Source: Phyllobates terribilis | Lineage: Eukaryota | NCBI RefSeq assembly: GCF_046119375.1 | Contig: NW_027362765.1 | Coordinates: forward strand, 16,430,001 to 16,494,000 | Reading direction: 5' to 3' | DNA: 64,000 bases | Part shown: one piece after another, positions 10,633 to 64,000 of the stretch | How the letters are laid out: each line of letters starts with the position of its first letter | Position numbering within the stretch: position 1 is the stretch's first letter | The notes under the pieces: generated by a model | Databases searched by the model: none | What the model saw: only the letters and a program-made list of their open reading frames with translations | What the model was told of the DNA's origin: nothing | Made by a program: the position numbers and the translations under genes

Positions 10633-10831
10633 CATGGTTCCCGTTGAGCCCCACGGCTCTTCGCTCTCAGAGACATTTGAATCCTTGTCTGGCGAATACA
10701 TGCACTAAGAAAATTTTTTTTCTCAAGCTGAGGTTCAGGCGATTTACGCACCAGCCCAAATGGAGATATCAGCACTCGTTCCTGCGGATCCACCACGGTA
10801 CTATGGGGATCCAAAATGAAGCCGTGCATTT

Positions 10832-15785: not shown

Positions 15786-15803
15786 TGGTACTTTTGGGAA
15801 AAT

Positions 15804-16230
15804 TATACTGTGTGGGGGCTTCACACATACTGCATAAGGGACATAATGGGGGCATTACACTGTGTGGGGGCATCATACACACTGCATAAGGGGCATATGG
15901 GGGCATTACACTGTGTGGGGGCATCATACATCCTGCATAAGGGGCATAATGGGGGCATTACACTGTGTGGGGCATCATACATACTGCATAAGGGGCATAT
16001 GGGGGCATTACACTGTGTGGGGGCATCATACACACTGTATAAGGGGCATAATGGGGGCATTACACTGTGTGGGGGGCATCATACACACTGTATAAGGGGC
16101 ATAATGGGGGCATTACACTGTGTGGGGGCATCATATATCCTGCATAAGGGGCATAATGGGGGCCTTACACTGTGTGGGGGTATCATACATCCTGCATAAG
16201 GGGCATAATGGGGGCATTACACTGTGGGGG
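15804..16230. repeat. About 52-bp G-rich minisatellite (GGGGCATTACACTGTGTGGGGGCATCATACATACTGCATAAGGGGCATAATG)
   Basis: About 8 units; paralog at 59308-59885. Confidence 0.93.
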
Positions 16231-16405
16231 TCCTGTACTATGAGAACAATACGTTTCCTCACTTTCTGTCTCCATAGTTGGGTCGTATGTATCTATTACA
16301 GGAAACAGAACAAAAACCTTATGATTCTTATAAAGGGGCAACACAAGACCCCAAAAGAGTCTCCGTGCTGAAGGGCTTAATGCCCCCTGCGCCAGTAATG
16401 GGGAA

Positions 16406-16569
16406 TCTCCACATACCTCCACCTGCAGAGCCGCCACCACATATATGGCTGTTCTGTGCGCACAGGACCTGTGATGAGGTCACAGGAGGGGAGGAGTCAG
16501 GGGTCACATGATCAGGGGCCTCAGTGGATGCAGGACTCTGCTGTGCTGGTTGTCATGGTGCTGGATGAG
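16406..16569 (-). promoter_or_regulatory. Putative core promoter / non-coding first exon, copy 1 (donor GAG|GTATGT at 16417/16416)
   Basis: 164 bp identical to 60071-60234; E-box GTCACATGAT, TGACCTCA, GGGGAGGAG motifs. Confidence 0.55.
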
Positions 16570-16615
16570 GTGAAGTTTATGTGTGTGGTCAGGAGGGGTT
16601 TACAGTGTGGATGTA

Positions 16616-18817
16616 GCAGAGTCGTGTGTGTACGAGGTGTACGGAGCGGAGCCGCGCGTGTACGAGGTGTACGGAGCGGAGCCGCGCGTGTACGAGGCGT
16701 ACGGAGCGGAGGCGCGCGTGTACGAGGCGTACGGAGCGGAGGCGCGCGTGTACGAGGCGTACGGAGCGGAGGCGCGCGTGTACGAGGCGTACGGAGCGGA
16801 GGCGCGCGTGTACGAGGCGTACGGAGCGGAGGCGCGCGTGTACGAGGCGTACGGAGCGGAGGCGCGCGTGTACGAGGCGTACGGAGCGGAGGCGCGCGTG
16901 TACGAGGCGTACGGAGCGGAGGCGCGCGTGTACGAGGCGTACGGAGCGGAGGCGCGCGTGTACGAGGCGTACGGAGCGGAGGCGCGCGTGTACGAGGCGT
17001 ACGGAGCGGAGCCGCGCGTGTACGAGGCGTACGGAGCGGAGCCGCGCGTGTACGAGGCGTACGGAGCGGAGCCGCGCGTGTACGAGGCGTACGGAGCGGA
17101 GCCGCGCGTGTACGAGGCGTACGGAGCAGAGCCGCGCGTGTACGAGGTGTGCGGAGCCGCGTGTGTGCGAGGTGTACGGAGCCGAGCGGCGTGTGTACGA
17201 GGCGTACGGAGCCGAGCGGCGTGTGTACGAGGCGTACGGAGCGGAGGCGCGCGTGTACGAGGCGTACGGAGCGGAGGCGCGCGTGTACGAGGCGTACGGA
17301 GCGGAGGCGCGCGTGTACGAGGCGTACGGAGCGGAGGCGCGCGTGTACGAGGCGTACGGAGCGGAGCCGCGCGTGTACGAGGCGTACGGAGCGGAGCCGC
17401 GCGTGTACGAGGCGTACGGAGCGGAGCCGCGCGTGTACGAGGCGTACGGAGCGGAGCCGCGCGTGTACGAGGCGTACGGAGCAGAGCCGCGCGTGTACGA
17501 GGTGTGCGGAGCCGCGTGTGTGCGAGGTGTACGGAGCCGAGCGGCGTGTGTACGAGGCGTACGGAGCCGAGCGGCGTGTGTACGAGGCGTACGGAGCCGA
17601 GCGGCATGTGTACGAGGAGTACGGAGCAGAGCGGCGTGTGTACGAGGCATACGGAGCAGAGCGGCGTGTGTACGAGGCGTACGGAGCGGAGCGGCGTGTG
17701 TACGAGGCGTACGGGGTGGAGCCGCGCGTGTACGAGGTGTACGGAGCGGAGCCGCGCGTGTACGAGGTGTACGGACCGCAGCCGCATGTGTAAGAGGTGA
17801 GCGGAGCCGCGTGTGTACGAGGTGTACGGAGCGGAGCCGCGTGTGTGCGAGGTGTACGGAGCCGAGCGGTGTGTGTACGAGGCGTACGGAGCCGAGCGGC
17901 GTGTGTACGAGGCGTACGGAGCAGAGCGGCGTGTGTACGAGGCGTACGGAGCAGAGCGGTGTGTGTACGAGGCGTACGGAGCAGAGCCGCGTGTGTGCGA
18001 GGCGTACGGAGCAGAGCCGCGTGTGTGCGAGGCGTACGGAGGCGAGCGGCGTGTGTACGAGGCGTACGGAGCCGAGCGGCGTGTGTACGAGGCGTACGGA
18101 GCAGAGCGGCGTGTGTACGAGGCGTACGGAGCAGAGCCGCGTGTGTACGAGGCGTACGGAGCAGAGCCGCGTGTGTACGAGGCGTACGGAGCGGAGCCGC
18201 GCGTGTACGAGGTGTACGGACCGGAGCCGCATGTGTACGAGGTGAGCGGAGCCGCGTGTGTACGAGGTGTACGGAGCGGAGCCGCGTGTGTGCGAGGCGT
18301 ACGGAGCCGAGCGGCGTGTGTACGAGGCGTACGGAGCAGAGCGGCGTGTGTACGAGGCGTACGGAGCAGAGCGGCGCGTGTACGAGGCGTACGGAGCAGA
18401 GCGGCGCGTGTACGAGGCGTACGGAGCAGAGCGGCGCGTGTACGAGGCATACGGAGCGGAGTCGCGCGTGTACGAGGCGTACGGAGCGGAGCCGCGCGTG
18501 TATGAGGCGTACGGAGCGGAGCCGCGCGTGTACGAGGTGTACGGAGCGGAGCCGCGCGTGTACGAGGCGTACGGAGCGGAGCCGCGCGTGTACGAGGCGT
18601 GCGGAGCCGTGTGTGTACGAGGTGTACGGAGCGGAGCCGCGCGTGTACGAGGTGAACGGAGCAGAGCCGCGTGTGTACGAGGTGTATGGAGCAGAGCCGC
18701 GTGTGTACGAGGCGTACGGAGCAGAGCCATGTGTGTACGAGGTGTACGGAGTCGAGCAGCGTGTGTACGAGGTGTACGGAGTGGAGCCGCGCGTGTAGGA
18801 GGTGTACGGAGTGGAGC
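16616..18817. repeat. CpG-dense 30-bp satellite, about 73 units
   Basis: Unit GAGCCGCGTGTGTACGAGGCGTACGGAGCG and variants. Confidence 0.97.
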
Positions 18818-18824
18818 CCCCTTT

Positions 18825-36937: not shown

Positions 36938-38352
36938 CTGTATTTTTCGGACTATAAGAAACTTTTTTCCTCCAAAATTTTGGAGGAAATTGGGGGGGGT
37001 GCGTCTTATAGTCCGAATATACTGTTGTTGTACTGTTGCTGTGGATGGTGGGGGGAGCGGCAGAGGAGACAGCAGCTGCCTGCTGTAGCCCGCTGCTAAA
37101 AAAAATGAATATTCACTCTTCCTCATGCCCATGGGTGTGTGGAACACTGAATATTCATTCTCCTTAAAAGCGGGCGCACAGCTGCAGCGGCTTGGCAGTC
37201 ATGTGAGCCCGCTATTAAAGGGCATAAATATTCATTACTCCCCACTCCCATGGGCGTGGAGAGTAGTGAATATTCATGTTCTTTAATAGCGCCACAGCAT
37301 GAGCAGCAGCTGCGGCTACAGTATGCACCCACTATTAAGGAGAATGAAGTCACTACTCCCCACACCTATAGTCCTAGCGTGGGGAGCAGTGACTATTCCG
37401 GCAGCTCATCTCACCGTGTAAGGGCACATGGCAGTGACGTCATGCGCTGCCCACAAAGTGAGATCATCTGCTGGCAGCAGAACAGGATGCAGCGCTGGAG
37501 CAGAGTGAAGGAAGGTAAGTAGAATCCTTTATTTCTGTGCAGCGTGATGGGGATGGAGGTGCCATACATATCAGGATGAGGGGTGCCATGCATACCAGGA
37601 TGAGGGGTGCCATGCATACCAGGATGAGGGATGTGGGGTGCCATGCATACCAGGATGGGGGATGTGGGGTGCCATGCATACCAGGATGGGGATGAGGGGT
37701 GCCATGCATACCAGGATGGGGCTGGAGGCTAGGCATACCAGGATGGGGATGAGGGGTGCCATGCATTCCAAGATGGGGATGGTGGTGCCAAGCATACAAG
37801 GATGAGGAATGAAGGGTGCCATTCATACAAGGATGAGGGGTGCCATACATACCAGGATGGGGGGTGCCATGCATACCATGATGGGGATGAGGGGTGCCAT
37901 GCATACCAGGATGGAGGATGGGCGTGCCATGCATACCAGGATGGGGATTGGGATGCCATGCATACCAAGATGGGGATCAGGGGTGCCATGCATACCAGGA
38001 TGAGGGGTGCCATGCATACCAGGATGAGGGGTGCCATGCATACCAGGATTGGGGATGAGGATGCCATGTTTACCAGGATGGGGATGAGGGGTGCCATGCA
38101 TACCAGGATGGGGATGAGGGGTGCCATGCATACCAGCATGGGGATGGGGGGGCCATGTTTAACAAGAAGGGGGAACCATATATACCAGGATGAGGAATAT
38201 TAACAGAATTGGGGACATTACCCCTATAACAGTGTCAGCAGCAGACCCCCTCCCCCAATGCATCATGACCACATTTTTTGCTTTCTATTTTCCTCCTCTA
38301 AAACCTAGCTGCATCTTATGGTCCGGCGTGTCTTATAGTCTGAAAAATATGG
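36938..38352. mobile_element. Tc2/pogo-like MITE with internal 23-29 bp minisatellite (about 37540-38190)
   Basis: TIR C(T/C)GTATTTTTCGGACTATAAG with TA TSD at 36936 and 38353. Confidence 0.85.
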
Positions 38353-38769: not shown

Positions 38770-39950
38770 TTAAAAAAGCTTCTCTCCTGTGTGACTGCTC
38801 TGGTGACTAAGCAGAGATGATTTCTTCACAAAACATTTTCCACATTCTGAACAGGAAAAAGGTTTTTGCCTTGTGTGACTTGTCTGATGTCTATCAAAAT
38901 GCGTTTTCTGGTTAAAACATTTCCCACATTCTGAACAGGAAAAAGGCTTCTTCCCTGTGTGGGTTTTCTGGTGCTGAACAAAATATGATTTCTGCTTAAA
39001 AGATTTTCCACATTCTGAACATGAAAAAGGCTTCTCCCCCGAGTGAATTCTCTGGTGCTTAACAAAATATGATTTCTGGTTAAAACATTTCCCACATTCT
39101 GAACATCTAAAAGGCTTCTCCCCTGTGTGAGTTCTCTGGTGCTTAACAAAATTTGATTTCTGGTTAAAACATTTCCCACATTCTGAACATGAAAAAGGCC
39201 TCTCCCCTGTGTGAGTTCTTTGATGTATAACAAGAAACCATTTCTGATTAAAACATTTCCCACATTCTGAACATCTAAAAGGCTTCTCCCCTGTGTGCGT
39301 TTTCTGGTGCTTAACAACATTTGATTTATGTGTAAAACATTTCCCACATTCTGAACATGAAAATGGCTTCTCCCCTGTGTGAGTTCTCTGGTGACTAACC
39401 AGATCAGTTTTCTGGTTAAAACATTTCCCACATTCTGAACATGAAAATGGCTTTTCCCCTGTGTGAGTTCTCTGGTGCCTAACAAAATCTGATTTCTGGT
39501 TAAAACATCTCCCACATTCTGAACAGGAAAATGGCTTCTCCCCTGTGTGAATTCTCTGGTGGTTAACAAGATTTGATTTCTGGTTAAAACATTTCCCACA
39601 CTTGGAACAAGAAAATATATTCTCCGCTGTGTGAAATTTTTGATCTTTAAGAAAAGACTTTTCGAGTGGAAAAGTATCTCCATATTCGGAAAATGAAAAT
39701 GCCTTCTTTGCTCTAGGAGATATTTGTTTTTTAATGCTGATTTCGTGCCTTTGATTTTCCTTAGTAGTCGGTAATGAATCAGAATATGGGACCGGTTTCA
39801 TAGGATCAGATGATAGATCTTTGCTGTGAAGGGATGATAGTATATCTGGAGTAATGGCATTCACTTCAATTGTATCTAGTGGGATCTCATGATTATCTGA
39901 TTTAAAAATTGAAGATGTCAGCTGTCCCTCTACTCTCCTGGTACAGTCAT
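38770..39950 (-). CDS. ZNF terminal exon: spacer, 1 decayed plus 10 intact C2H2 fingers
   Basis: CSECGKCF..H...HTGEKPF repeats; acceptor TTGGCAG at 39951. Confidence 0.97.
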
Positions 39951-42900
39951 CTGCCAAGAATAAAACCAATTATCATTTTTGAATAAAATAAAAAAAAAAA
40001 ATTTTTTTAATGATAACATTTCTAATTAAACAGTCCATAAAAATTAAAAAATATTGAATTATTCACCAAGAAAACCTCATAGGATGAACCAGTAGAAAGT
40101 GGTGTTCAACTGTTTGTTCATTCTGCCTCCCAGATATGGAACAAAAAGGCACCAAACAATGTTATGTAGGTGAAAATAATAACAATAAAAACTTCTACTC
40201 TTCTCACAAAAAACAAGTCCCCACGCAGGTTCTTCATCCGTCAGTGGAAAACAGAGGTTTCCACATTAGAGGCTCATTCTGTTGAAAAGCAACATGGCTT
40301 CCATAAACCAATCCAGCAATATCCGCTCTCCCAAACTCAAATCTCCCCCTCGTTCTGAGCCTTGCAGTGCGCCCAAACCACATTTAGCATCCATGTATTT
40401 GGCATTACTATAGTGAGAAGAACCCAATTAATTTACGGTGTGTGTCTCCTGGAGCACAATCTAGGCACTATGTGTTGTGTAATAAAATGGAAATGTGTAA
40501 TTTTCACTCTCCAACATCCACTGGGTGCTAATTTCTGGAAAGTGTCTGTGGAGTCAAAATAGTCACTACTCCTATAGATTAATTCACTCAGTATATAATG
40601 TCCACAATTGAGTCACTTTATGGGGATTTCTACTGCTCTGGGTTTCTGTCATATTAGGGCTTCTGTAAATGGTGTGTCCCATCTCCTCTGGGATCTGCTC
40701 CTGCGACATCTGCTTCTGTCATCTGGAGCCGCCTTATTCATTCTGCAGGCGCGCTGGTGATGGAGATGTCAGAACCAGAAGCTCCGGGCGGCGCAGGCTC
40801 TGTCAAGCCAGTAAGATTAGGGTGCCTGGAACCTATAGTACCTTCCAGTCTGGCAGTATGGGTGTGTGTTCTGTCCAGCTGGAGTAATCTGCTCCCTGTT
40901 TCAGCCAACTAGAAAACACTGCACTCTAATAAAGCTGGAAGCTGCCAGATCCAGCCTTGTTCTCCTCTGGTTCAGTCCTTTGTGCTCAGCTCTCGGCTTG
41001 TGTATTCGTCTCCTGCTGTGACCCCGGCCCGTTTATTGACTACTCTTGTGTCTTCTGATTTAGTATTTTCTCTGCTCTCCTGGTTCTGACTCAACTACCT
41101 GACTATTCTTCTTGCCATCTCACACCACAGAACAGCAGGTAACACCGTGGCCCAAGCCTAAGGGTCTCTGTGTAAGTCCAGATCTATGTAGAGCAAGTCT
41201 TGGCAATCTGCGGCCCATGGATCACATCCAGCCCTCTGACATTCTCAGCCAGAGGGCCGCAGAAAACCGGAGCTACGATTCTGATTTGCCCCCGTATTTT
41301 CACTGGTGAATGTGGGGCTGCTTAGTAACTTGTTTGCAGAGCTGCTGGCCTCAAACTTCCACAGGAGAGAAGCAGGGACTAAAACTCCCATCTTTGCAGA
41401 TAATGGGCAAGTAATTTCTAAGTGGAGCCCAGATAACACCTAGGAGGCAGCATTGTGTGTCTGCTGATCAGGTTACAGCACCTGTGATGCCTCTTTTCAC
41501 ACTAACTGTGGAATAAAAGCTGGTACTGCGGTTTACCTTCAGGGCGAGCCGCTAATTAGTAGCCACTGTATCTCCCTGGGTCTTCCTGGCAGGTGATGGG
41601 AGATAGGACACTTGGGCTGAGTTTTCCTACTGAATACAGGGTCCAGCACCTCCACTACATGCAGCCATTAGATGGGATATTCTATGTGCTCCCCAAATTG
41701 CTTTTCTGCTTCACCATGTACTCTGCTGCCACCTCACCTTTGTATGTGAAGGTTAACCCTTTCCTCACCCCTTTGCATCTAGCAGGTGAGGTAAGGGATA
41801 GCCCCTCACAGTGCTCCCTCCTGTGATCTGTGGTTTATCACATTCACACCATAGGCTGCAATAAAGATCCCCGCCTTCCTTTCCTGTCACCACCTGCACC
41901 ACATGTGATGTGGATCTATGCTTGTGAAACAGGAGTGGGAGAACAACTTTTTTTCCAATGCTCCCAATTTATTTATTGCCTGATCAACAGCTAATACTTG
42001 TTACAATAACCTTTTTTTGCAACAAATATTTAGGCTATGTTCACACGACTGAGAAAGATCACAAGCACATACTGGTCTCTTCTGTAATTCGGATGATTCT
42101 CGCCTATTGAAGTCAATGGGTGTGCAAAAAAAAAAACCCGAAGGTGAATTTCATACTAAATGTCTATTTAATTCAATAATGTAATCACTTAGTCATTTGA
42201 ACAGATTTTGGTGGAGGATAATATTGTGGTCAAGAGGCAAAATGGTGACCGCACGATTATGATACATCCAGACTATATAACCGATAAAACAGCCACAGCC
42301 TGTGACTGAGAAGAATCTGCGACTTCTGTGCATTTAGTGGCTACTACTCACCTGGGTAGTCATATGTAGGAATCTCCACTTTACACCGCTCATCACCCCT
42401 CACATATGTCTCTGTAGTATTAATATGGGTCAGATCTTCACCCTGAAACAAATATTGTAAAAGTCGCAGACAGATGGAGAAGTCACATCTATGATCAGCT
42501 CTAATCCTGCCATCTCCACCGTTCTCATTACACAAGTATAAAACATATAATACTGGTGGATAAAACAAGACCAAACACAAGACCTTCACAGCCGTCTACA
42601 CATTATAGGGGAGAACCTATGACATGACAATGTCTCTCCATCTACCTGATGATCCTGAGGAACATTGGGATCTTCTTGTTTACAGTCAGGTGGAAGAAAA
42701 GCATGGGGAGATCTCTCTGGTGTTGTCCTTTTACTGGATAGAACTGGAGGAAACACATACAGGGACTGAATTCATTCTTTACGTACAGATAATTATAGGC
42801 CGTGTGTATTTAGTCCCGTCTATTACCTGGTGACGTGAGAAGCTCGGGAACCTCCATCATGACGTCCTTGTACAGATGTTTGTGTCCTTCTAAATACTCC

Positions 42901-43420
42901 CACTCTTCCATGGAGAAATAGACAGCGACATCCTGACACCTTATAGGAACCTGACACATACAATGATAGAGTCATACCACCGATCCCTTCATAGCATTAC
43001 TGTATAATGTCCCAGCATTCTCAGCAGTGTCACCTCTCCAGTCAGCAGCTCAATCATTATATAGGTGAGTTCTAGGATCTTCTGGTCATTGATGTCCTCA
43101 TGTATCAGACGGTGAGGTGGAGGCCCTGTGATTGGGCTCAGGGGTCTTTCCCATCCCTCAGACACAGGGTCCTGACAGCGCTCACTAGAGGTCTTCTTCA
43201 CTACTGTGTAATCCTGGTTATGGAGAGACACATTAATAAATATCACTACAGACATTTCCAGAGTCCTCACCTCTCCAGTTCTGTCTATCTGTTATTCCCA
43301 TAGATAAGAAAGATGTAATGTGACGTCATCAGAATCTCTCACCTCTCCAGTAAGCCGGAAGAGGATCTCTAGGGTGAGGTGTAATATCCTCTCAGCCATC
43401 TTGTCCCTGTCCATATCCAT
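38770..43420 (-). CDS. FAX/KRAB-like C2H2 zinc-finger protein (XlCOF/XlCGF-like), 583 aa, 6 coding exons
   Basis: Exons 43420-43343, 43213-43034, 42950-42827, 42743-42646, 42442-42352, 39950-38770; all GT-AG, phases 0,0,1,0,1 consistent; 1752 nt total, open. Confidence 0.92.
42352..42442 (-). CDS. ZNF coding exon 5 ([10 protein letters not shown]...YDYP)
   Basis: TTTCAG acceptor, GTGAGT donor, 91 nt. Confidence 0.85.
42646..42743 (-). CDS. ZNF coding exon 4 ([10 protein letters not shown]...PQDHQ)
   Basis: CTCCAG acceptor, GTAGAT donor, 98 nt. Confidence 0.85.
42827..42950 (-). CDS. ZNF coding exon 3, KRAB-A-like box ([33 protein letters not shown])
   Basis: DVAVYFS.EEW.YL...LYKDVM motif; 124 nt. 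Confidence 0.9.
43034..43213 (-). CDS. ZNF coding exon 2 (DYTVVKKTS...[16 protein letters not shown])
   Basis: AACCAG acceptor, GTGACA donor, 180 nt; FAX-type box. Confidence 0.88.
43343..43420 (-). CDS. ZNF coding exon 1 ([26 protein letters not shown]); exon extends as UTR to an acceptor at 43493
   Basis: ATG at 43420, GTGAGA donor; upstream ATTCAG acceptor implies a further 5' exon. Confidence 0.85.
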
Positions 43421-44903
43421 CTTTGATGGGTAAATAAGGAAAAATTTCTTATATAGAAGATCTTCACTGAGAGGATCTGATATTGTAGAGACCTGAATGA
43501 GAAGATGAGCCGATGTAACATCATAAAAATCCAATGTAATAATACAATTACTGGAGATAATAATGGGAAACATGGGAGATTTATTATTTTACACTATTTA
43601 GTTTTTTTTATTTACATCTAGCAATAAAACCTATATATTTTAGGCTGCAGACAAGAAGCAGTTTCTTCCTCTGAGTCAGCAACTGAATACGTTTCTCATA
43701 GACTCATCGTCCATAACGTTAATTGTCGTCTCATTTACTGACAATGGAATAGTCATTAGCAATACTGCAGGAGATATTCATTACAAGTGACATGAGAAAT
43801 AACTACTTCATTATGAAGACGACATCCTCATCTTCTATTAAGGCTCTATAATCATATTTGGCCAGAGTCACTTACTACATCACCACCGGCCGTCTAAATG
43901 AATGTTTCCCGTCTTCCCCGGACTATAATCTTCTATAACGTTAGATCTTATGTCTGACTTACACACAGAAGTTTGAGGCATTTCTAAAAGCTTTTTTGTT
44001 TGTACATACACCGCTGACAGAAATGATTTGATACCAAAGTCTCCATGTACAGTGTTTTATGTGGTTTATTTTTGGCCTTAGGCTTTCCTATTTTTCAAGA
44101 AAACACCAGAAAAAGCAGATATTAAAAGGTTTCAAAAGTAAATTGACACCAACAATTCTTGTAAAAAGAAAAAAACATGCAAAAAGCATAAGATTCATTT
44201 TTTTATTTTTTTTAATACGTTAAACATTTATTTAAAAATTAACTCTTTTGAGCACCAGAACATAGATGTACACCGCAGGGATGGCACAGGTGCGGCTGCA
44301 CAAAAACCCTGGCAGTTTAAACACTTGCTGCTGTCAAAAGCAAACATATCATCCAAGAAGGTTTGAGAGAGCTCAGCTGAATGCCCCTCCCCCTCCTCCA
44401 AGTACTCAATAATATGGGGCCGCCTAGTTACTATAATACTTAAATGCCTAATGGTGTCTGGGCCTGCAATATATGAAAGTCTCAAACCAAAAGTAAAGGG
44501 CAGAGTAAAAAAGCCAATATATAGTAGTATAAATCTATAATAATATATAAAGGAGACCCATAGAACCAAGGGATAGGAAACCATGAACAATATTTATTAA
44601 TTTAATTCATATACATCATAGAATTGCAACATAGACATTGGTGAAAGAAGACAGCTAAAAAATTGTCAGGAGATGGAATTAAACCTGCAGAAAGAGACAG
44701 CCCTTTCAATACATGGGTCTCCCCAACAAACTCAGTACACTTCGGTCCTAAAGATTAATATAATCAATAATGCCTCACACCATTAGAATATATCTGTCCA
44801 TTTCATAGATATCACCAAAAGGTAACACCTAAATGCGCCTCTTCGTTAGGAATACTAGTGTGGCATCATCGCCAGGTAATAGCAGTAATGTAGTATACAC
44901 ATA

Positions 44904-46076
44904 CTGTATTTTTCGGACCATAAGACGCACTTTTTTCCCCCTAAATTTGGGAGGAAAATGGGGGGTGCGTCTTATGGTCCAAATGTTACGTGCGGTGGTG
45001 GTGGTGGAGCGGGATCGCAGGGCGGTAGCGGCAGCAGAGGTGAGGCAGAGCAGCTGGGGCTGGGACCTGTGCCTGGCCGGTGTCGGGCTGTGAGCGGCAT
45101 CGGGCGGCGAAGCAGAGTGGCCTGCAAAGCTTTCCGGTGTGCGTGGCCATCTTCCTAGAGCTGTGATCTACAGGAAAATGGCTGCCTGAGCCGGCGCATG
45201 TCCAGAACGGTAGCTCCAGCGGCCATTTTCCTTCGCCGCTCACAGCCGGGCACCAGCCCCAGCCCGGTAAAGGCCCCAGTCTCGGCCCCAGCCAGAGGCC
45301 TCGGCCTCGGCCGCAGGCCCCAGCCTCGGCCTCAGCCGCAGGCCCCGGCATCAGCCACAGGCCCCAGCCTCAGGCCCCGGCATCAGCCACAGGCCCCGGC
45401 ATCGGCCACAGGCCCCGGCCTCGGCCGCAGGCCTCGGCATCAGCCGCAGGCCCCGGCCTCAGCCGCAGGCCCCGGCCTCAGCAGCAGGCCCCGGCCTCAG
45501 CCGCAGGCCCCGGCCTCAGCAGCAGGCCCCGGCATCAGCCACAGGCCCCGGCCTCGGGCCCGGCCTCAGGCCCCGGCATCGGCCTCAGCCACAGGCCCCG
45601 GCATCGGCCTCAGAAGCAGGCCGTGGCATGAGCCGCAGGCCTCGGCATCGGCCGCAGGCCTCGGCATTAGCCGCAGGCCTCGGCATCAGCCGCAGGCCCC
45701 GGCATCAGCCGCAGGCCCCGGCATCAGCCGCAGCCCTCAGCATCAGCCGCAGGCCCCGGCCTCAGCCGCAGGCCTCGGCATCAGCCGCAGGCCCCGGCCT
45801 CAGCCGCAGGCCAAGGCCTCAGCCACAGGCCCCAGCACAGGAACCGGCCAGTCTAAGGTCCCAAGCCAGGCACAGGCTCCACAACATCTCAGCTCTTCTT
45901 CTGCAGCCGCCAGCTTCGTGAGGGACCCTGCCTCCTGTGACCCTCGCTCCACCGCCCCCCAGGTAAGGTACCGTACATATAAAGACTATACGATGGACCC
46001 CCATCTTATAAAAATTATTTTTTTTCTATTTTCCACCCCAAAACTTGGGGTGCGTCTTATAGTCTGAAAAATACGG
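44904..46076. mobile_element. Tc2/pogo-like MITE with internal GC-rich 19-20 bp minisatellite (about 45250-45830)
   Basis: Same TIR as 36938; TA on the left, right TSD altered (AA). Confidence 0.82.
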
Positions 46077-49053: not shown

Positions 49054-50227
49054 TTAAGACAAGGAATCCTTCCTTAACTTAATCCCCTATAATTAGGCCT
49101 CCTGGCCTGATCTAAGGACCTCACTCTGCTCTTTGTCTCCACTATGCTCCCTGCATGGAATATGGATTCCCACTGCTATTCTATCTTTGCTTTCCCTAAG
49201 AACGTACTATCTGATGTCTCCCTCCTGGCACACAACACCATATCAATTCAAGTCTGCAACCAGATAGACTAAAAGTCTGTATTTCTCACTTACTTATTCA
49301 CATTTTACTCATCACCAGGAAATTGTTGTCCTGTGTGCCCATGTATCTCAGTACGAGGGCTCCCACACAGTATGATGGTCCCCATAGCACCTCACACAGT
49401 ATTATGGCCTGCTACACTAAATGAACAAAATGAGGACCCTTACTCAGTATAGAGGCCCTTACAGTCCACCACGGCCCCACACTCATGGCCCCCACCATCC
49501 GCCCACTCAGTATGGTGGCCCCCACAGCCCTTGAAATAATATGATGCTCTCACAAGTCCTTATATAAAAAAAAAAAAGAAACACTCCTGAGGTGTGCTGC
49601 TCCGATGCCTGTGCAGTGTGTGTACTGAGGCTCCATACTACATATCTGATCTAGTGACATCATTGTGCCTGCAGTGCAAGAAGTCTCGGACTCACAGGCG
49701 AAGGCTGAATTGTGAATTAGTGAGCTTTCGAATCCCTGATTCACTATTCTATTCAATTGTATCACCATCATGGGAATGTGGATATCACTGAAATTGTTAT
49801 GATGGGGAAGGAGAAGGTGCCCAATCCCGAGCTGCACCGAGCCCTCTCAATTCACGAACATTATAGCGGCCATGTGGGCTGCCACTATGGATGCTACGCC
49901 CCTGCCTATCCAACTAGTGTGTGCTAAATATATCGTAGGTCCTGGGTTTTTAGTATATGCACGAAAAATGGGGCTAAGTGAGTATTTATTATTTGCCGTC
50001 AGGTAGCCGGTGGGGCGGATTGTACCATATTGTGTATAGGGGGCAGTACTGTGGGAAAAAAAACCCTAAAGTAAAATCTTAAATGTTTATTAAATATATG
50101 CATTAAAGACTGGACTAACAACATATATACTTAAAGCTAGCAAAATTACAAGCCCAATGGCTTTTTGTGAATGTATATAAACAGATGTAAACAATGATGC
50201 TGCTGAATAACTGATACAGTCACTACC

Positions 50228-50909
50228 TGTCACGATGGTGTTGAGACTTTGGGTGCTAACCAGGTCCCTAGAACTAGGGGTGCCCTAGTTTTTCCCTGTC
50301 AACCGAATTACTCCTGAAGATGGAGACAATGGGATCTCATTCCTTCCTATGCTCCTATATCTACCCAGATCAGTCCCCTCCACCACCCAGGGTATTGGGA
50401 AGCTGAAGTGCATAAGAACACAATAACCAGAAAAACAAGGGAAGACAGACAGGGATAAATGAAAATACCAACCATATACACACACACCAAACAACAGAGT
50501 GTTGGGACACAGGGGAGTTAAGGGAAGGAAAATACAAATTAGGAGAGGAAGAGGATAAGTACACAGACAAAAACTCAAAGCAACAATCTCCAGACCAATC
50601 ACCAAACTCTAACTCCAACCACATACTTCACCTCCAGCTCCAGAACCAGGTAGTAAGAACTAACACTGGTTATCCCTAAGTGCCAGAGGCAAGCATATAT
50701 AGCAGGGGGGAGTGGCCAATACCGAATAGCTGAGACAATCCAATTAGGAAACCTCTAGGAGCTCAACTGAACAGATTAACCTCTGCACTACTAACAAGGA
50801 AAAAACAGCACTGTTTAATACGATGAGGACATACTTCTATCCAGTGAAGGAGTTTGTGAAACCAGACGCTGCAATCGTCTGGCCTCTCTGTTGCTGTATC
50901 TCCATGACA
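50228..50909 (-). mobile_element. Solo LTR, 682 bp
   Basis: TGTCA...TGACA; near-TSD CTACC/CTACT; TATA on the minus strand near 50695. Confidence 0.78.
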
Positions 50910-57559: not shown

Positions 57560-59280
57560 CGATAATGTCCATGCCCTAGTGTGCATGTCCCGAGGTGACA
57601 TGCTTTAAACTGTAACGCCAGATAAACTGTTTGCCACGGCGCCACTCGTACCCGTAACTGCGCATGCCCATAGTTATGTGTTCCACTCCGGAGCGCGTCT
57701 AGGATCATTGTCCGCGATTGAGCATGCCCTGATGTGTGCGGTTTACACCAAAGCGCATCACGATCTATCTGCGACAAAAACAAGTATTGCACATCCTCCA
57801 ATCATGCAATAGGCATGTAGATCTACTTTATCACTATAAAAAATATGGGATGGTGGCCCACAGTATATTCCTAAATGGTCATATTTGTCCCCTATTGCAT
57901 AATTAAAGCTACACAAGGATCACCACACTTGTTAGTTACTAAATAGTATATGTGGGATATAACTGATAAGAGATAATTCTGATATGGAAACTCAGATATC
58001 TCGATGAAGTAGAACAATATGTGAACCCAATTCAAAAGGAACTGAGTAGCAATGAATAGAGTATGAAATCCAAAAATATAATCCAGAATAGGGCTGTATT
58101 CACATAAAACAGGCATAGGAAATTTGCACATTGAGTCCCTCAGAGGCTAGTGAATCCAGTGTGGAAATCCACTCATTTTCCTTTTTGAGGATACATCTAT
58201 TGCGATCACTTCCTCCCACATTGGGTTTAACCACCTCGATGATACAAAAGGAGATGTCTCCTGTTTCTCCTCGATGTACACTGTTCATGTGTTCCACTAA
58301 TGGGGTGTCCCGACCATGGAGTATATAGCCCACAAGCTCCCCCAACCTCCTCCTAGACTCCCTCTTGGTCGTGCCTACATAATGTAGGGACAGGTGCATG
58401 TGATCATATATACAAGTCCTGAGGTTTTACAGTTGGAATAATCCCTCTGGAAAAAGGTTTTATCCATGGAGGAACCCAAGAAAGATTTACATGGTCTCAT
58501 CCAATTACATGTACAACATTCTCCACATCTAAAGAAACTGCAGATTCTTCTATCTAGCCAAGTCCCCTTGGGTGCAGTTTTTTTTTTTTATAGATACTAT
58601 GCACTAAATGATCCCTAATTGACAGACCCTTTCTGAAAATTATTGTGGGAGTAGATCCCATGAGCACCCCTCAGCTCGGGTCAGCCAGAAGTATATTCCA
58701 ATGTCTTCTGAGGAAAGTAAAGATACGGTCACTCTGATTGTCATCAATTCCTATTACTTGTGTTATCCCATCTTTTTCTTGGTCTCTTGGTTTGTTATGG
58801 AGAAGTGTCTGTCTCTTATTTTTTTGCAAACGAATGTGCGTAAACGAAAAAGTATTGTGGATACCTTTTTCCCTGAATATGATATTCATGTCAATTGCCT
58901 GTATATTAAAATCTGTGACATTAGAACAGTTCCTTCTCAACCGCAAAAATTGTCCCTTTGGTTTTCCTTTTTTTTATGGGCATGGGGTGTTGGCTATCCA
59001 GCTTAAATACACTATTAGTGCTTGTAAATTTATGGAAGATGAGTGTCTCTAGGGTCCCATCCTGTTCTTTCTAGATTAGGACATCCAGGAAAGGCCACAG
59101 GTAACAGGTAATCCCCGACAGGCAGTATATTATTGTACAAAGCCTTGATATCTAGAAAGGCCTGCACCCTACATGAATGTATACATGCTCAAGGGTATAC
59201 ATGGAGGGGAGCAGGTGAAGGGAAAATCATTTTCCAGAGAGATTATTTCAACTGTAAATCCTCAGGACTTATTCCAACTA
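57560..59280 (-). pseudogene. Penelope-like element fragment (RT remnant, linker, GIY-YIG, 3' region), copy 2
   Basis: YVGTTKRESRRRLGE...NEWISTLDSLASEGLN; FLRRHWNILLADPS. Confidence 0.82.
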
Positions 59281-59307
59281 CAGGACCTCAGGTGGTACTG
59301 TGGGAAC

Positions 59308-59885
59308 ATTATACCGTGTGGGGGCATCATACATACTGCATAAGGGGCATAATGGGGGCATTACACTGTGTGGGGGCATCATACATACTGCATAAGGGGC
59401 ATAATGGGGGCATTACACTGTGGGGGCATCATACATACTGCATAAGGGGCATAATGGGGGCATTACATGTGTAGGGGCATCATACATCCTGCATAAGGGG
59501 CATAATGGGGGCATTACACTGTGTGGGGGCATCATACATACTGCATAAGGGGCATAATGGGGGCATTACACTGTGTGGGGGCATCAAACATACTGCATAA
59601 GGGGCATAATGGGGGCATTACACTGTGTGGGGGCATCATACATACTGCATAAGGGGCATAATGGGGGCATTACACTGTGGGGGCATCACACATACTACAT
59701 AAGGGGCATAATGAGGGCATTACACTGTGTGGGGGCATCATACATACTGCATAAGGGGCATAATGGGGGCATTACACTGTGGGGGCATCATACATACTGT
59801 ATAAGGGGCATAATGGGGGCATTACACTGTGGGGGCATCACACATACTACATAAGTGGCATAATAGGGGCATTACACTGTGGGGC
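59308..59885. repeat. About 51-53 bp G-rich minisatellite, about 11 units
   Basis: Paralog of 15804-16230. Confidence 0.93.
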
Positions 59886-60070
59886 CAGTAAAGGGGCCCT
59901 GTACTATGAGAACAATACGTTTCCTCCCTTCCTGTCTCCATAGTTGGGTCGTATGTATCTATTACAGGAACCAGAACAAAACCTTATGATTCTTATAAAG
60001 AGGCAACACAAGACCCCAAAAGAGTCTCCGTGCTGAAGGGGTTAATGCCCCCTGCGCCCAGTAATGGGGG

Positions 60071-60234
60071 TCTCCACATACCTCCACCTGCAGAGCCGCC
60101 ACCACATATATGGCTGTTCTGTGCGCACAGGACCTGTGATGAGGTCACAGGAGGGGAGGAGTCAGGGGTCACATGATCAGGGGCCTCAGTGGATGCAGGA
60201 CTCTGCTGTGCTGGTTGTCATGGTGCTGGATGAG
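60071..60234 (-). promoter_or_regulatory. Putative core promoter / non-coding first exon, copy 2 (donor GAG|GTATGT at 60082/60081); candidate 5' exon of the ZNF gene
   Basis: Identical to 16406-16569; same strand as the ZNF gene, whose first coding exon has an otherwise unpartnered acceptor. Confidence 0.55.
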
Positions 60235-60280
60235 CTGAAGTTTATGTGTGGGGTCAGGAGGGGTTTACAGTGTGGATGTA

Positions 60281-63200
60281 GCAGAGCCGCGTGTGTACGA
60301 GGCGTACGGAGCGGAGCCGCGTGTGTACGAGGCGTACGGAGCGGGGCCGCGTGTGTACGAGGCGTACGGAGCGGGGCCGCGTGTGTACGAGGCGTACGGA
60401 GCGGGGCCGCGTGTGTACGAGGCGTACGGAGCGGGGCCGCGTGTGTACGAGGCGTACGGAGCGGGGCCGCGTGTGTACGAGGCGTACGGAGCGGGGCCGC
60501 GTGTGTACGAGGCGTACGGAGCGGGGCCGCGTGTGTACGAGGCGTACGGAGCGGGGCCGCGTGTGTACGAGGCGTACGGAGCGGGGCCGCGTGTGTACGA
60601 GGCGTACGGAGCGGGGCCGCGTGTGTACGAGGCGTACGGAGCGGGGCCGCGTGTGTACGAGGCGTACGGAGCGGGGCCGCGTGTGTACGAGGCGTACGGA
60701 GCGGGGCCGCGTGTGTACGAGGCGTACGGAGCGGGGCCGCGTGTGTACGAGGCGTACGGAGCGGGGCCGCGTGTGTACGAGGCGTACGGAGCGGGGCCGC
60801 GTGTGTACGAGGCGTACGGAGCGGGGCCGCGTGTGTACGAGGCGTACGGAGCGGGGCCGCGTGTGTACGAGGCGTACGGAGCGGGGCCGCGTGTGTACGA
60901 GGCGTACGGAGCGGGGCCGCGTGTGTACGAGGCGTACGGAGCGGGGCCGCGTGTGTACGAGGCGTACGGAGCGGGGCCGCGTGTGTACGAGGCGTACGGA
61001 GCGGGGCCGCGTGTGTACGAGGCGTACGGAGCGGGGCCGCGTGTGTACGAGGCGTACGGAGCGGGGCCGCGTGTGTACGAGGCGTACGGAGCGGGGCCGC
61101 GTGTGTACGAGGCGTACGGAGCGGGGCCGCGTGTGTACGAGGCGTACGGAGCGGGGCCGCGTGTGTACGAGGCGTACGGAGCGGGGCCGCGTGTGTACGA
61201 GGCGTACGGAGCGGGGCCGCGTGTGTACGAGGCGTACGGAGCGGGGCCGCGTGTGTACGAGGCGTACGGAGCGGGGCCGCGTGTGTACGAGGCGTACGGA
61301 GCGGAGCCGCGTGTGTACGAGGCGTACGGAGCGGAGCCGCGTGTGTACGAGGCGTACGGAGCGGAGCCGCGTGTGTACGAGGCGTACGGAGCGGAGCCGC
61401 GTGTGTACGAGGCGTACGGAGCGGAGCCGCGTGTGTACGAGGCGTACGGAGCGGAGCCGCGTGTGTACGAGGCGTACGGAGCGGAGCCGCGTGTGTACGA
61501 GGCGTACGGAGCGGAGCCGCGTGTGTACGAGGCGTACGGAGCGGAGCCGCGTGTGTACGAGGCGTACGGAGCGGAGCCGCGTGTGTACGAGGCGTACGGA
61601 GCGGAGCCGCGTGTGTACGAGGCGTACGGAGCCGAGCCGCGTGTGTACGAGGCGTACGGAGCCGAGCCGCGTCTGTACGAGGCGTACGGAGCCGAGCCGC
61701 GTGTGTACGAGGCGTACGGAGCCGAGCCGCGTCTGTACGAGGCGTACGGAGCCGAGCCGCGTGTGTACGAGGCGTACGGAGCCGAGCCGCGTGTGTACGA
61801 GGCGTACGGAGCCGAGCCGCGTGTGTACGAGGCGTACGGAGCCGAGCCGCGTGTGTTCGAGGCGTACTGAGCCGAGCCGCGTGTGTACGAGGCGTACGGA
61901 GCCGAGCCGCGTGTGTTCGAGGCGTACTGAGCCGAGCCGCGTGTGTACGAGGCGTACGGAGCCGAGCCGCGTGTGTACGAGGCGTACGGAGCCGAGCCGC
62001 GTGTGTACGAGGCGTACGGAGCCGAGCCGCGTGTGTACGAGGCGTACGGAGCCGAGCCGCGTGTGTACGAGGCGTACGGAGCCGAGCCGCGTGTGTACGA
62101 GGCGTACGGAGCCGAGCCGCGTGTGTACGAGGCGTACGGAGCCGAGCCGCGTGTGTACGAGGCGTACGGAGCCGAGCCGCGTGTGTACGAGGCGTACGGA
62201 GCCGAGCCGCGTGTGTACGAGGCGTACGGAGCCGAGCCGCGTGTGTACGAGGCGTACGGAGCCGAGCCGCGTGTGTACGAGGCGTACGGAGCCGAGCCGC
62301 GTGTGTACGAGGCGTACGGAGCCGAGCCGCGTGTGTACGAGGCGTACGGAGCCGAGCCGCGTGTGTACGAGGCGTACGGAGCCGAGCCGCGTGTGTACGA
62401 GGCGTACGGAGCCGAGCCGCGTGTGTACGAGGCGTACGGAGCCGAGCCGCGTGTGTACGAGGCGTACGGAGCCGAGCCGCGTGTGTACGAGGCGTAAGGA
62501 GCCGAGCCGCGTGTGTACGAGGCGTAAGGAGCCGAGCCGCGTGTGTACGAGGCGTAAGGAGCCGAGCCGCGTGTGTACGAGGCGTAAGGAGCCGAGCCGC
62601 GTGTGTACGAGGCGAACGGAGCAGAGCCGCGTGTGTACGAGGCGTACGGAGCAGAGCCGCGTGTGTACGAGGCGTACGGAGCCGAGCCGCGTGTGTACGA
62701 GGCGTACGGAGCCGAGCCGCGTGTGTACTAGGCGTACGGAGACGAGCCGCGTGTGTACGAGGCGTACGGAGCCGAGCCGCGTGTGTACGAGGCGTACGGA
62801 GCCGAGCCGCGTGTGTACGAGGCGTAAGGAGCCGAGCCGCGTGTGTACGAGGCGTAAGGAGCCGAGCCGCGTGTGTACGAGGCGTAAGGAGCCGAGCCGC
62901 GTGTGTACGAGGCGTAAGGAGCCGAGCCGCGTGTGTACGAGGCGTAAGGAGCCGAGCCGCGTGTGTACGAGGCGTAAGGAGCCGAGCCGCGTGTGTACGA
63001 GGCGTAAGGAGCCGAGCCGCGTGTGTACGAGGCGTAAGGAGCCGAGCCGCGTGTGTACGAGGCGTAAGGAGCCGAGCCGCGTGTGTACGAGGCGTAAGGA
63101 GCCGAGCCGCGTGTGTACGAGGCGAACGGAGCAGAGCCGCGTGTGTACGAGGCGTACGGAGCAGAGCCGCGTGTGTACGAGGCGTACGGAGCAGAGCCGC

Positions 63201-64000
63201 GTGTGTACGAGGCGTACGGAGCCGAGCCGCGTGTGTACGAGGCGTACGGAGCCGAGCCGCGTGTGTACTAGGCGTACGGAGACGAGCCGCGTGTGTACGA
63301 GGCGTACGGAGCCGAGCCGCGTGTGTACGAGGCGTACGGAGCCGAGCCGCGTGTGTACGAGGCGTAAGGAGCCGAGCCGCGTGTGTACGAGGCGTAAGGA
63401 GCCGAGCCGCGTGTGTACGAGGCGTAAGGAGCCGAGCCGCGTGTGTACGAGGCGTAAGGAGCCGAGCCGCGTGTGTACGAGGCGTAAGGAGCCGAGCCGC
63501 GTGTGTACGAGGCGTAAGGAGCCGAGCCGCGTGTGTACGAGGCGTAAGGAGCCGAGCCGCGTGTGTACGAGGTGTACGGAATGGAGCCGTGTGTGTACGA
63601 GGTGTACGGAGCAGAGCCGTGTGTGTACGAGGCGTACGGAGCAGAGCCGTGTGTGTACGATGTGTACGGAGCGGAGCCGTGCGTGTAAGAGGTGTACAAA
63701 GCAGAGCCGCGCGTGTAAGAGGTGTACAGAGAGGAGCCACGCGTGTACGGAGCGAAGCCGCGTGTGTACGAGGTGTACGGAGCGGAGCCGCGTGTGTACG
63801 AGGTGTACGGAGCGGAGCCGTGTGTGTACGAGGTGTACGGAGCGGAGCCGCGCGTGTAAGAGGTGTACAAAGCGGAGCCGCGCGTGTAAGAGGTGTACAA
63901 AGCGGAGCCGCGCGTGTAAGAGGTGTACAAAGCGGAGCCGCGCGTGTAAGAGGTGTACAAAGCGGAGCCGCGCGTGTACGCGGTGTACAAAGCGGAGCCG
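60281..64000. repeat. CpG-dense 30-bp satellite, at least 120 units, runs off the window
   Basis: Exact 30-bp periodicity with blocks of variant units. Confidence 0.98.

What the first reader, a model, noticed from the sequence alone, without database searches (positions are those of the whole stretch)
59308..64000. Repeat-promoter-repeat module: a CpG-dense satellite may act as a copy-number-variable CpG island for ZNF genes
Seen: in both duplicates the order is G-rich 52-bp minisatellite, conserved 164-bp core with splice donor, then about 45 bp later a 30-bp satellite with 5-6 CpG per unit and little CpG decay; array sizes are about 73 and at least 120 units. On the minus strand the satellite is directly upstream of the putative TSS, and the ZNF gene 16.6 kb downstream needs a 5' exon. 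Inference: a cluster-wide regulatory unit in which satellite length and methylation tune or silence each ZNF paralog, possibly with autoregulation by cluster ZNFs; I am not aware of a description of this.
Basis: partly seen in the sequence, partly recalled or inferred. Interest (0 to 1): 0.8.

Follow-up and report, generated by a model that had tools for sequence, protein, structure and literature searches.

The report
Shared ZNF promoter flanked by minisatellites
In a poison-frog-like genome, a short conserved stretch between two tandem-repeat arrays is a real promoter and non-coding first exon shared by a very large KRAB zinc-finger gene family, but nothing yet shows that the CpG-rich repeat array beside it controls the genes.

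Summary
Two copies (15802-18818 and 59307-64000) have the same order: a 52-bp minisatellite, a ~395-bp core, then a 30-bp satellite with 5-6 CpG per unit (73.9 and at least 124 units).

RNA-library contigs show the core holds a minus-strand leader exon, about 60146/60134 to 60082. Depth rises from ~200 to ~380,000 exactly at the GT donor. Seventeen contigs continue into a sequence that matches the FAX exon acceptor at 43492 at 27 of 30 bases. It is not shown for this particular gene: only 0.36 of its exon-2 sampled words occur in those RNA runs.

The satellite-as-CpG-island idea is untested, and some evidence weighs against it:
- The transcription start lies about 135-150 bp outside the array.
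- The core is CpG-poor (observed/expected 0.23-0.28).
- Array B consists of long runs of identical, recently expanded units.
- Older units (array A, distal B) carry CpG-to-TpG/CpA changes.

The two copies belong to a segmental duplication of at least 12 kb. Human ZNF genes have comparable neighbours (ZAV, SST1, beta-satellite).

Unchecked notes from this scan report the same module on other DNA of this genome (s1-211502, s1-225816, s1-232612, s1-218028).

The parts
60082..60146 (-). Leader (non-coding) exon 1, copy B. The 3' end is exact at 60082. The 5' end is approximate, at 60134-60146.
   Evidence: Summed contig depth in X1/X2 is ~200/~40 at 59860-60003, rises to 380,000/76,000 at 60084-60115, and falls to 2,000/700 by 60148-60163. 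Contig pieces end at 60138-60146. One loose end at 60126 runs 8 letters and then into a sequencing adapter. Seventeen contigs leave the genome just before 60080.
60080..60081 (-). GT splice donor of exon 1, copy B (minus strand reads GGAG|GTATGT)
   Evidence: Sequence. The depth step and loose ends fall at 60080-60082. The 2-base ambiguity arises because exon 2 also begins with GT.
60147..60279 (-). Proximal promoter, copy B. It has no TATA box, is CpG-poor, and carries an E-box-like CATGTG (60170-60175) about 25-40 bp upstream of the mapped 5' ends.
   Evidence: sequence; core CpG observed/expected 0.23; only 2 differences from copy A between 60235 and 60286.
60071..60234 (-). 164-bp island of perfect identity with 16406-16569. 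It covers the donor, exon 1 and about 90 bp of promoter.
   Evidence: 0 differences. Flanks are 91-94% identical. My calculation from those numbers gives an expected 0.001-0.03 runs this long.
60280..64000 (.). 30-bp CpG-rich satellite, copy B, at least 124 units, upstream of the promoter, running off the window
   Evidence: One search shows CpG observed/expected 1.71, runs of 32, 28 and 21 identical units, and a duplicated higher-order block. One search shows no C>T changes in the main body and many in 63541-64000.
59885..60079 (-). First ~195 nt of intron 1, copy B (unique sequence)
   Evidence: about 95% identical to copy A. One search shows low depth, with a 2-9k shoulder at 60004-60067.
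59307..59884 (.). 52-bp minisatellite, copy B. It is G-rich on the + strand, which is the template strand for this gene. It lies in intron 1, starting 198 bp past the donor.
   Evidence: 11.2 copies, 93% matches; 1 CpG in 578 bp.
16417..16481 (-). Leader exon 1, copy A, placed by the fixed offset of 43665 from copy B; identical in sequence
   Evidence: 16406-16569 identical to 60071-60234.
16482..16627 (-). Proximal promoter, copy A
16628..18818 (.). 30-bp CpG-rich satellite, copy A, 73.9 units. It is more diverged, and its majority unit differs from that of array B.
   Evidence: Its distal edge abuts a 5'-truncated Ty3/gypsy-like reverse-transcriptase fragment at 18819.
15802..16230 (.). 52-bp minisatellite, copy A (8.3 copies)
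43343..43492 (-). Exon 2 of the downstream KRAB/FAX ZNF gene. An AG acceptor lies at 43494-43493 and the main ATG at 43420-43418. It encodes [26 protein letters not shown].
   Evidence: The RNA loose-end consensus matches 43461-43490 at 27/30.
38770..43342 (-). Rest of the ZNF gene: exon 43213-43034, KRAB exon 42950-42827, further small exons, and the zinc-finger exon ending at 38770
   Evidence: Pfam KRAB E=1.2e-11 and ten C2H2 fingers. Relatives are dendrobatid 'XlCOF22-like' and 'XlCGF57.1-like' proteins.

Best explanation
The conserved core is the TATA-less, CpG-poor promoter plus a ~55-65-nt non-coding leader exon of a massively expanded KRAB/FAX zinc-finger gene family in a dendrobatid-like frog.

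Shown:
- Transcription runs on the minus strand, starting about 60134-60146.
- The exon ends at 60082 and is spliced to the FAX-type exon 2.
- Promoter and exon are kept identical between two duplicates that otherwise differ by 6-9%.
- The two copies in the window arose by segmental duplication of a whole gene unit (at least 12 kb is collinear). That unit carried the promoter, the 52-bp minisatellite 198 bp into intron 1, and the 30-bp CpG-rich array 45 bp beyond the conserved island.

Inferred:
- The two arrays are fast-turning-over minisatellites maintained by unequal exchange or slippage next to a promoter. Frogs appear to lack PRDM9, so recombination there is expected to target promoter-like features.
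- The upstream array is CpG-rich because its unit is CpG-rich and its bulk is very young or homogenised, not because it is a protected CpG island.
- Any effect on the promoter would more likely be methylation-linked dampening than activation. No effect of either kind has been demonstrated.
For: Promoter and exon: one search shows a ~1,800-fold depth step at the GT donor, 17 contigs in X1 and 8 in X2 leaving the genome at 60080, contig ends at 60138-60146, and an adapter read-through near 60134. Searches show the loose-end consensus equals 43461-43490 at 27/30, directly after an AG acceptor. One search shows the 164-bp perfect island exactly covering donor, exon and proximal promoter.

Family size: one search returns 7,610 hits at E<=1e-30, mostly dendrobatid frogs, and 908 contigs lay on 451 bp in X1.

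Segmental duplication: searches show collinear blocks 6188-6771, 6771-7414, 14712-15422 and 15636-16621 against 50017-50619, 57765-58408, 58407-59120 and 59119-60286, with different insertions between them.

Young, turning-over array: one search shows runs of 32, 28 and 21 identical units and a duplicated higher-order block. The majority units of arrays A and B differ.

Against a CpG island at the start site: one search gives core CpG observed/expected 0.23-0.28. Searches show decay transitions seen at 11 of 14 CpG positions, against transitions at 7 of 16 other positions, concentrated in array A and distal B.

Background: about 10.7% of Xenopus tropicalis chromosomes are tandem arrays tied to recombination (PMC10794172). 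PRDM9 was not found in three amphibians (PMC5519329).
Against: - The runs are labelled 'RNA?' (kind guessed) and are assembled contigs, so depth is a poor measure of expression.
- The link from this copy to this ZNF gene is not shown (share 0.36).
- The module appears to be retained next to many paralogs (unchecked notes s1-211502, s1-232612, s1-225816, s1-218028).
- The core-satellite junction is present at about 90% likeness in contigs of another species (X8 records 29, 31, 32). That retention could mean the array is maintained by selection.
- The enrichment of CpG decay is modest when counted as distinct events, and no methylation data could be examined.
Confidence: 0.5

Rival explanations
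1. The 30-bp array is an unmethylated, copy-number-variable CpG island that recruits CpG-binding chromatin factors and so licenses or tunes the adjacent CpG-poor ZNF promoter, paralog by paralog.
For: CpG observed/expected is 1.7-1.8 over 2.2 to more than 3.7 kb. The array lies only ~135-150 bp upstream of the mapped 5' ends. Length differs between paralogs, 74 versus at least 124 units. The main body of array B has no C>T decay. The junction is kept in another species (X8). Other windows reportedly show the same arrangement (unchecked notes).
Against: The start site and core are CpG-depleted (0.23-0.28), whereas known non-methylated islands span the start site. Lack of decay in array B is explained by runs of identical, recently expanded units. 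Older units in array A, distal B and the first units at the core junction of A carry TpG/CpA in place of CpG. Computational CpG-island calls in cold-blooded vertebrates predict non-methylated DNA poorly (PMC3583005).
Confidence: 0.15
2. The array is a methylated, heterochromatin-prone repeat that dampens or silences the neighbouring promoter in proportion to its length. This would be a per-gene rheostat analogous to repeat-induced or macrosatellite-linked silencing.
For: Methylation-type CpG decay is seen in older units. The neighbouring promoter is CpG-poor. KRAB-ZNF clusters are classic heterochromatin-marked regions (general knowledge; a regulatory role for arrays near ZNF genes is proposed in PMC3018141). 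This paralog, which has the longer array, has an exon 2 poorly represented in RNA runs, but that is a single weak data point.
Against: No methylation, chromatin or length-versus-expression data could be obtained. The family leader exon is very abundant in RNA contigs, so many copies of the module are active despite their arrays.
Confidence: 0.22
3. The core plus array is transposon-derived: a retroviral or LTR U3 carrying an internal VNTR, with the ZNF promoter head-to-head against it. The module would then spread with, or was captured from, a mobile element rather than by gene duplication.
For: An earlier unchecked note on another piece of this genome reads a CpG-rich 30-bp VNTR as lying inside a retroviral U3, head-to-head with ZNF promoters (s1-225816). 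Here a Ty3/gypsy-like pol fragment on the + strand directly follows array A.
Against: In this window the reverse-transcriptase reading frame runs right up to the array edge at 18819, with no LTR, primer-binding site or gag between them. No satellite units or core-like sequence occur elsewhere in or after that element. The A/B homology extends at least 10 kb into intron 1 through several unrelated repeats in the same order, which fits segmental duplication and not transposition.
Confidence: 0.08

Closest known systems
ZAV (ZFP37-associated VNTR), human 9q32 macrosatellite (Tremblay et al. 2010, PMC3018141)
   Same: [quoted passage not shown] Copy number is variable (3-31 units).
   Different: ZAV units are 5.3 kb, not 30 bp. 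It is a single locus rather than one array per paralog, it is absent in mouse, and the array itself is expressed. Polymorphism and expression of the frog array are untested here.
Beta-satellite blocks in the 19p12 ZNF91-type cluster and SST1 arrays at 19q13.12 (Eichler et al. 1998, cited in PMC3018141)
   Same: Tandem-repeat blocks are co-duplicated with KRAB-ZNF gene units in a growing cluster. A regulatory role for such arrays in ZNF clusters has been proposed.
   Different: The human blocks are tens of kb, lie between genes and are not positioned at each promoter. The frog array sits about 140 bp from the start site of each unit seen.
Xenopus rDNA spacer 60/81-bp enhancer repeats
   Same: A frog gene promoter is preceded by a variable number of short GC-rich tandem repeats.
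   Different: The rDNA repeats copy part of the gene promoter. Here the unit shows no similarity to the core beyond shuffled controls. The polymerase (I versus II) and the gene class also differ.
FAX/KRAB zinc-finger genes of Xenopus (XlCOF and XlCGF families)
   Same: The downstream gene has the FAX-type N-terminal exons, a KRAB box and a C2H2 array. Database relatives are named XlCOF22-like and XlCGF57.1-like.
   Different: The relatives found are dendrobatid (67-75% identity), not Xenopus. No open paper describing the leader exon or promoter of these genes was found.

Membership tests
Promoter plus first exon of a spliced Pol II gene (KRAB/FAX ZNF family) | Sharply bounded transcribed segment ending at a canonical GT donor | tested here: met
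   One search shows the depth step at 60080-60083.
Promoter plus first exon of a spliced Pol II gene (KRAB/FAX ZNF family) | Donor joined in RNA to the next exon of the gene family at an AG acceptor | tested here: met
   Seventeen contigs (X1) and 8 (X2) continue into a sequence matching 43461-43490 at 27/30, directly after the AG at 43494-43493. This is family-level evidence. This paralog's own junction was not seen.
Promoter plus first exon of a spliced Pol II gene (KRAB/FAX ZNF family) | Conservation above the neutral background between paralogs | tested here: met
   0 differences in 164 bp against 91-94% identity in the flanks.
CpG island / non-methylated island promoter | High GC and CpG observed/expected over several hundred bp | tested here: met
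   The satellite has GC 0.69 and observed/expected 1.7-1.8.
CpG island / non-methylated island promoter | The CpG-rich block spans the transcription start site | tested here: not met
   The 5' ends map to about 60134-60146 and the array starts at 60280. The core has 6 CpG in 395 bp, observed/expected 0.23.
CpG island / non-methylated island promoter | Unmethylated in germline and soma | not testable with these tools
   No methylation data were available. The indirect sign, CpG>TpG/CpA variants in older units, points the other way but is modest.
ZNF-associated VNTR or macrosatellite (ZAV type) | CpG-rich tandem array within 2 kb upstream of a KRAB-ZNF gene transcribed away from it | tested here: met
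   Definition from PMC3018141.
ZNF-associated VNTR or macrosatellite (ZAV type) | Kilobase-scale repeat unit | tested here: not met
   The unit is 30 bp.
ZNF-associated VNTR or macrosatellite (ZAV type) | Copy number polymorphic between individuals | not testable with these tools
   Only a difference between paralogs is seen (73.9 versus at least 124 units).
Promoter-derived spacer enhancer repeats (Xenopus rDNA 60/81 type) | Repeat unit shares sequence with the gene promoter | tested here: not met
   Local alignment of the unit against three parts of the core scores no better than shuffles.
LTR U3 with internal VNTR | Array lies inside an LTR that bounds a retroelement, with LTR remainder and primer-binding site next to it, or a matching second LTR | tested here: not met
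   The reverse-transcriptase frame abuts the array edge at 18819. No units or core-like sequence occur elsewhere. This was tested in this window only.
Segmental (gene-unit) duplication in a ZNF cluster | Collinear homology through unrelated sequence blocks, broken by copy-specific insertions | tested here: met

The most novel reading that the evidence does not exclude
Every paralog of a thousand-member frog KRAB-ZNF family keeps an invariant CpG-poor promoter and leader exon clamped between two hypervariable minisatellites. The CpG-dense upstream array would act as a heritable, length-dependent methylation or chromatin rheostat that gives each paralog, and each individual, its own expression set-point. 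This would be a regulatory use of minisatellite instability not described for ZNF clusters.
Probability: 0.15. Interest if true: 0.75.

Novelty: new variant of a known kind. Interest (0 to 1): 0.45.

Why it matters
How hundreds to thousands of near-identical KRAB-ZNF genes are individually regulated is an open question. This work defines, with RNA support, the shared promoter and leader exon of a very large frog ZNF family. It also shows that this promoter sits within 50-200 bp of two fast-evolving tandem arrays.

If array length or methylation turned out to set promoter output, it would be a natural, many-times-replicated experiment on copy-number-dependent epigenetic control. If not, it is a clear case of minisatellites accumulating at promoters in a PRDM9-less vertebrate and being carried along by gene duplication. 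It is also a warning that computational CpG-island calls in frog genomes can simply be satellites.

Tried and rejected
1. I tried to fetch paralogous loci from annotated dendrobatid genomes to test genome-wide co-occurrence. The census could not be done.
2. Searching earlier findings by sequence returned nothing. The operators warn that a blank there means nothing.
3. Three literature searches for the FAX domain or FAX-ZFP promoters found nothing relevant in the open library. The 1989-1993 Xenopus FAX papers I recall could not be read.
4. I tested whether the very high depth of the 48-nt exon segment could be a known small RNA or SINE head. There were no Rfam matches at E<=1 and no tRNA-like genes.
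5. I tested whether the core is decayed satellite, or the satellite copies the promoter. Neither holds.
6. The LTR/U3 origin is rejected for this window.
7. The GC-rich 19-bp array at 45283-45833, 1.8 kb upstream of exon 2, is a possible rival start site. It could not be tested because the one read-laying run was used on the core. Its CpG observed/expected is only 0.62.
8. Specific transcription of the satellite is not supported. Its depth in X1 (31-37k) is about what unit copy number times the ~200 background would give. That is a rough argument only.
Full report
**What is there.** TRF finds a 52-bp minisatellite at 15802-16230 (8.3 copies) and 59307-59884 (11.2 copies). It finds a 30-bp satellite at 16628-18818 (73.9 copies, 92% matches) and 60280-64000 (124.3 copies, 97% matches, cut by the window end). 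About 395 bp of unique sequence lies between the two arrays in each copy, and the two versions align at about 97%. Within that stretch, 16406-16569 and 60071-60234 are identical over 164 bp. The satellite starts 45 bp beyond the island.

**The duplicates are part of a larger duplication.** BLAST of the window against itself shows collinear homology:
- 6188-6771 with 50017-50619
- 6771-7414 with 57765-58408
- 14712-15422 with 58407-59120
- 15636-16621 with 59119-60286

Identity is 91-94%. A 7.3-kb insertion is present only in copy A and a 7.1-kb insertion only in copy B. This is the signature of a segmental duplication of a gene unit that later took up different transposons. It is not the signature of a compact mobile module.

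Against that 6-9% background, a perfect 164-bp run is unexpected. From these numbers I calculate about 0.001-0.03 such runs expected in about 3 kb of alignment.

**The gene.** On the minus strand the window holds one complete ZNF gene:
- Exon 2 is 43492-43343. It follows an AG at 43494-43493, has its ATG at 43420, and encodes the FAX-type [26 protein letters not shown].
- A further exon is 43213-43034.
- The KRAB exon is 42950-42827 (Pfam KRAB, E=1.2e-11).
- Several small exons follow.
- The last exon carries ten C2H2 fingers and ends at 38770.

The closest database proteins are 67-75% identical and come from Ranitomeya, Phyllobates and Dendrobates, with names such as 'oocyte zinc finger protein XlCOF22-like'. 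7,610 of 8,000 scored candidates pass E<=1e-30. The window is therefore from a dendrobatid-like frog with an enormous family of these genes.

**RNA evidence.** The 401-bp core shares 0.70-0.76 of its sampled 31-mers with RNA-labelled runs of one organism (A) and about 0.3 with three others (B, C, D).

In A:
- Summed contig depth is about 213 (X1) or 36-92 (X2) over 59860-60003.
- It jumps to about 380,000 (X1) and 76,000 (X2) at 60084-60115.
- It falls to about 2,000 and 700 by 60148-60163.
- The step sits on the minus-strand donor GGAG|GTATGT (GT = 60081-60080).
- Seventeen contigs in X1 and eight in X2 leave the genome exactly there.
- Their consensus continuation matches window 43461-43490 at 27 of 30 bases. 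That is the start of FAX exon 2, immediately after its AG acceptor.
- The apparent 2-base offset is explained by exon 2 itself beginning with GT.
- Contig pieces end at 60138-60146, and one loose end runs into a sequencing adapter about 8 nt past 60126. The 5' ends therefore lie near 60134-60146.

A DNA contaminant cannot produce an exon1-exon2 junction at canonical splice sites, so I treat the leader exon and its splicing as shown, with three caveats. The run type is a guess ('RNA?'). The data are assembled contigs. Summed depth reflects thousands of paralogs sharing the same words, not the expression of one gene.

Organism B shares the exon. In organism D, contigs at about 90% likeness bridge the core-satellite junction, so that adjacency predates the species split.

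**What is not shown.** The junction contigs differ from this window's exon 2 at three positions, so they come from paralogs. This gene's own exon 2 holds only 0.36 of its 14 sampled words in organism-A RNA runs. That is about what the conserved FAX coding part alone would give. So 60082 to 43492 is a sound inference from the family pattern and the local geometry, but it is not an observation.

Copy A has no FAX exon in the 16 kb available downstream. By collinearity its exon 2 would fall just beyond the window start.

**Is the satellite a CpG island for this promoter?** Composition gives a sharp contrast. The satellite has GC 0.69 and CpG observed/expected 1.7-1.8. The core, which contains the start site, has 6-7 CpG in about 395 bp (0.23-0.28). 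The minisatellite has 0-1 CpG. The start site is thus about 135-150 bp outside the CpG-rich block and sits in ordinary CpG-depleted DNA. Non-methylated island promoters do not look like this.

The absence of decay in array B has a simpler explanation. The array consists of runs of 32, 28, 21 and 12 identical units plus a duplicated higher-order block. Its bulk is therefore far younger than the 6-9% diverged duplication it sits in.

Where units are older, CpG-to-TpG/CpA changes are the commonest class. This applies to array A, the distal 460 bp of B, and the first units next to the core in A. About 6% and 16% of CpG positions are affected. Decay transitions occur at 11 of 14 CpG positions, against transitions at 7 of 16 other positions. 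That is suggestive of germline methylation, but it is modest evidence and the variant counts are inflated by unit inheritance.

The majority units of arrays A and B differ, which shows independent homogenisation after the duplication. The unit has no detectable similarity to the core, so this is not a promoter-derived enhancer repeat of the Xenopus rDNA type.

**Origin.** Array A ends at 18818. A degraded Ty3/gypsy-like reverse-transcriptase frame on the + strand begins at the very next bases, followed by integrase-like ORFs. There is no LTR remainder between them. No satellite unit occurs anywhere outside the two arrays, and nothing like the core occurs near that element. The 'VNTR inside a retroviral U3' reading made on another window of this genome is therefore not supported here. 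No Rfam family or tRNA-like head explains the abundant exon segment.

**Context.** Frog genomes are very rich in tandem arrays: 10.7% of X. tropicalis chromosomes, with array expansion attributed to recombination (PMC10794172). This one window gives 58 TRF rows. An array next to a promoter is not by itself remarkable, and the two copies here represent one duplication event, not two independent associations.

PRDM9 was not found in the three amphibians examined (PMC5519329). In PRDM9-less vertebrates, recombination tends to target promoter-like features. That gives a non-adaptive route to minisatellites flanking a promoter, and possibly to retention of G/C through biased gene conversion. This last step is my inference.

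In human, CpG-island-rich arrays next to KRAB-ZNF genes are known, and a regulatory role has been suggested for them: ZAV within 2 kb of ZFP37, which is transcribed away from it; SST1 arrays around 29 ZNF genes; and beta-satellite in 19p12 (PMC3018141). Computational CpG-island calls predict non-methylated DNA poorly in cold-blooded vertebrates (PMC3583005).

**Earlier notes of this scan.** First-stage notes on other pieces of the same genome describe the following:
- 'the same upstream module plus a CpG-dense 30-bp VNTR at very different copy number' at every ZNF paralog (s1-211502)
- CpG-dense 30-bp VNTRs between divergent paralog promoters (s1-232612)
- the U3 reading (s1-225816)
- VNTRs starting 150-195 bp into intron 1 of three promoters (s1-218028)

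In this window the 52-bp array starts 198 bp into intron 1. I could not see those sequences, so they are leads, not support. Together with the 908 contigs laid on the core, they make a family-wide module likely.

**Verdict.** The regulatory-satellite half remains open, and the sequence evidence leans towards a young, turning-over, probably methylated minisatellite carried along by gene-unit duplication.

The finding is a new variant of a known kind (VNTR-associated KRAB-ZNF genes). It is of moderate interest, mainly because it offers a highly replicated natural system for testing whether repeat length sets promoter output.

Noticed in passing
window 60105-60107 (minus strand) through 43492 to about 43375: The leader exon carries an upstream ATG (in CCATATATGTGG). 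After splicing to exon 2 it opens a ~58-codon reading frame that overlaps the main ATG at 43420 out of frame and stops 43 nt after it. Contigs of organism B carry a 1-base insertion behind 60099, inside this frame, so it is probably not a conserved peptide. It could still damp translation.
   Followed up: partly
window 44986-46067 (19-bp array at 45283-45833): A GC-rich block (GC about 0.70, CpG observed/expected 0.62) with a 19-bp tandem repeat lies in the putative intron 1, only about 1.8 kb upstream of FAX exon 2. It is a possible alternative start site and could not be tested.
   Followed up: no
window 18819-20700 (+ strand): A degraded, 5'-truncated Ty3/gypsy-like element (reverse transcriptase with in-frame stops, integrase-like ORFs) begins at the first base after satellite A. 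This marks either the duplication breakpoint or an old insertion site.
   Followed up: partly
window 7414-14712: A 7.3-kb insertion specific to copy A contains a ~4-kb tandem duplication. Each half has a 45-bp repeat (8845-8971; 12876-13002), a long 35-bp C/T-rich array (9285-10173; 13315-13824) and a second 35-bp repeat (10244-10379; 13887-14004).
   Followed up: no
window 60170-60175: An E-box-like CATGTG, within GATCATGTGACC on the minus strand, lies about 25-40 bp upstream of the mapped 5' ends, inside the perfectly conserved island. There is no TATA box.
   Followed up: no
window 5-547 and 37551-38192: Two further G-rich minisatellites (31-bp and 24/30-bp units with GGGG(C)CAT-type motifs) resemble the 52-bp array in composition. 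Such arrays seem to be a common repeat class in this genome.
   Followed up: no
window 60004-60067: The first ~78 nt of intron 1 have 10-40 times the depth of the next 140 nt in organism-A contigs. Loose ends at 60011 read ...CACAG before it. This may be unspliced precursors, or paralogs in which different sequence (possibly the minisatellite) starts closer to the donor.
   Followed up: no
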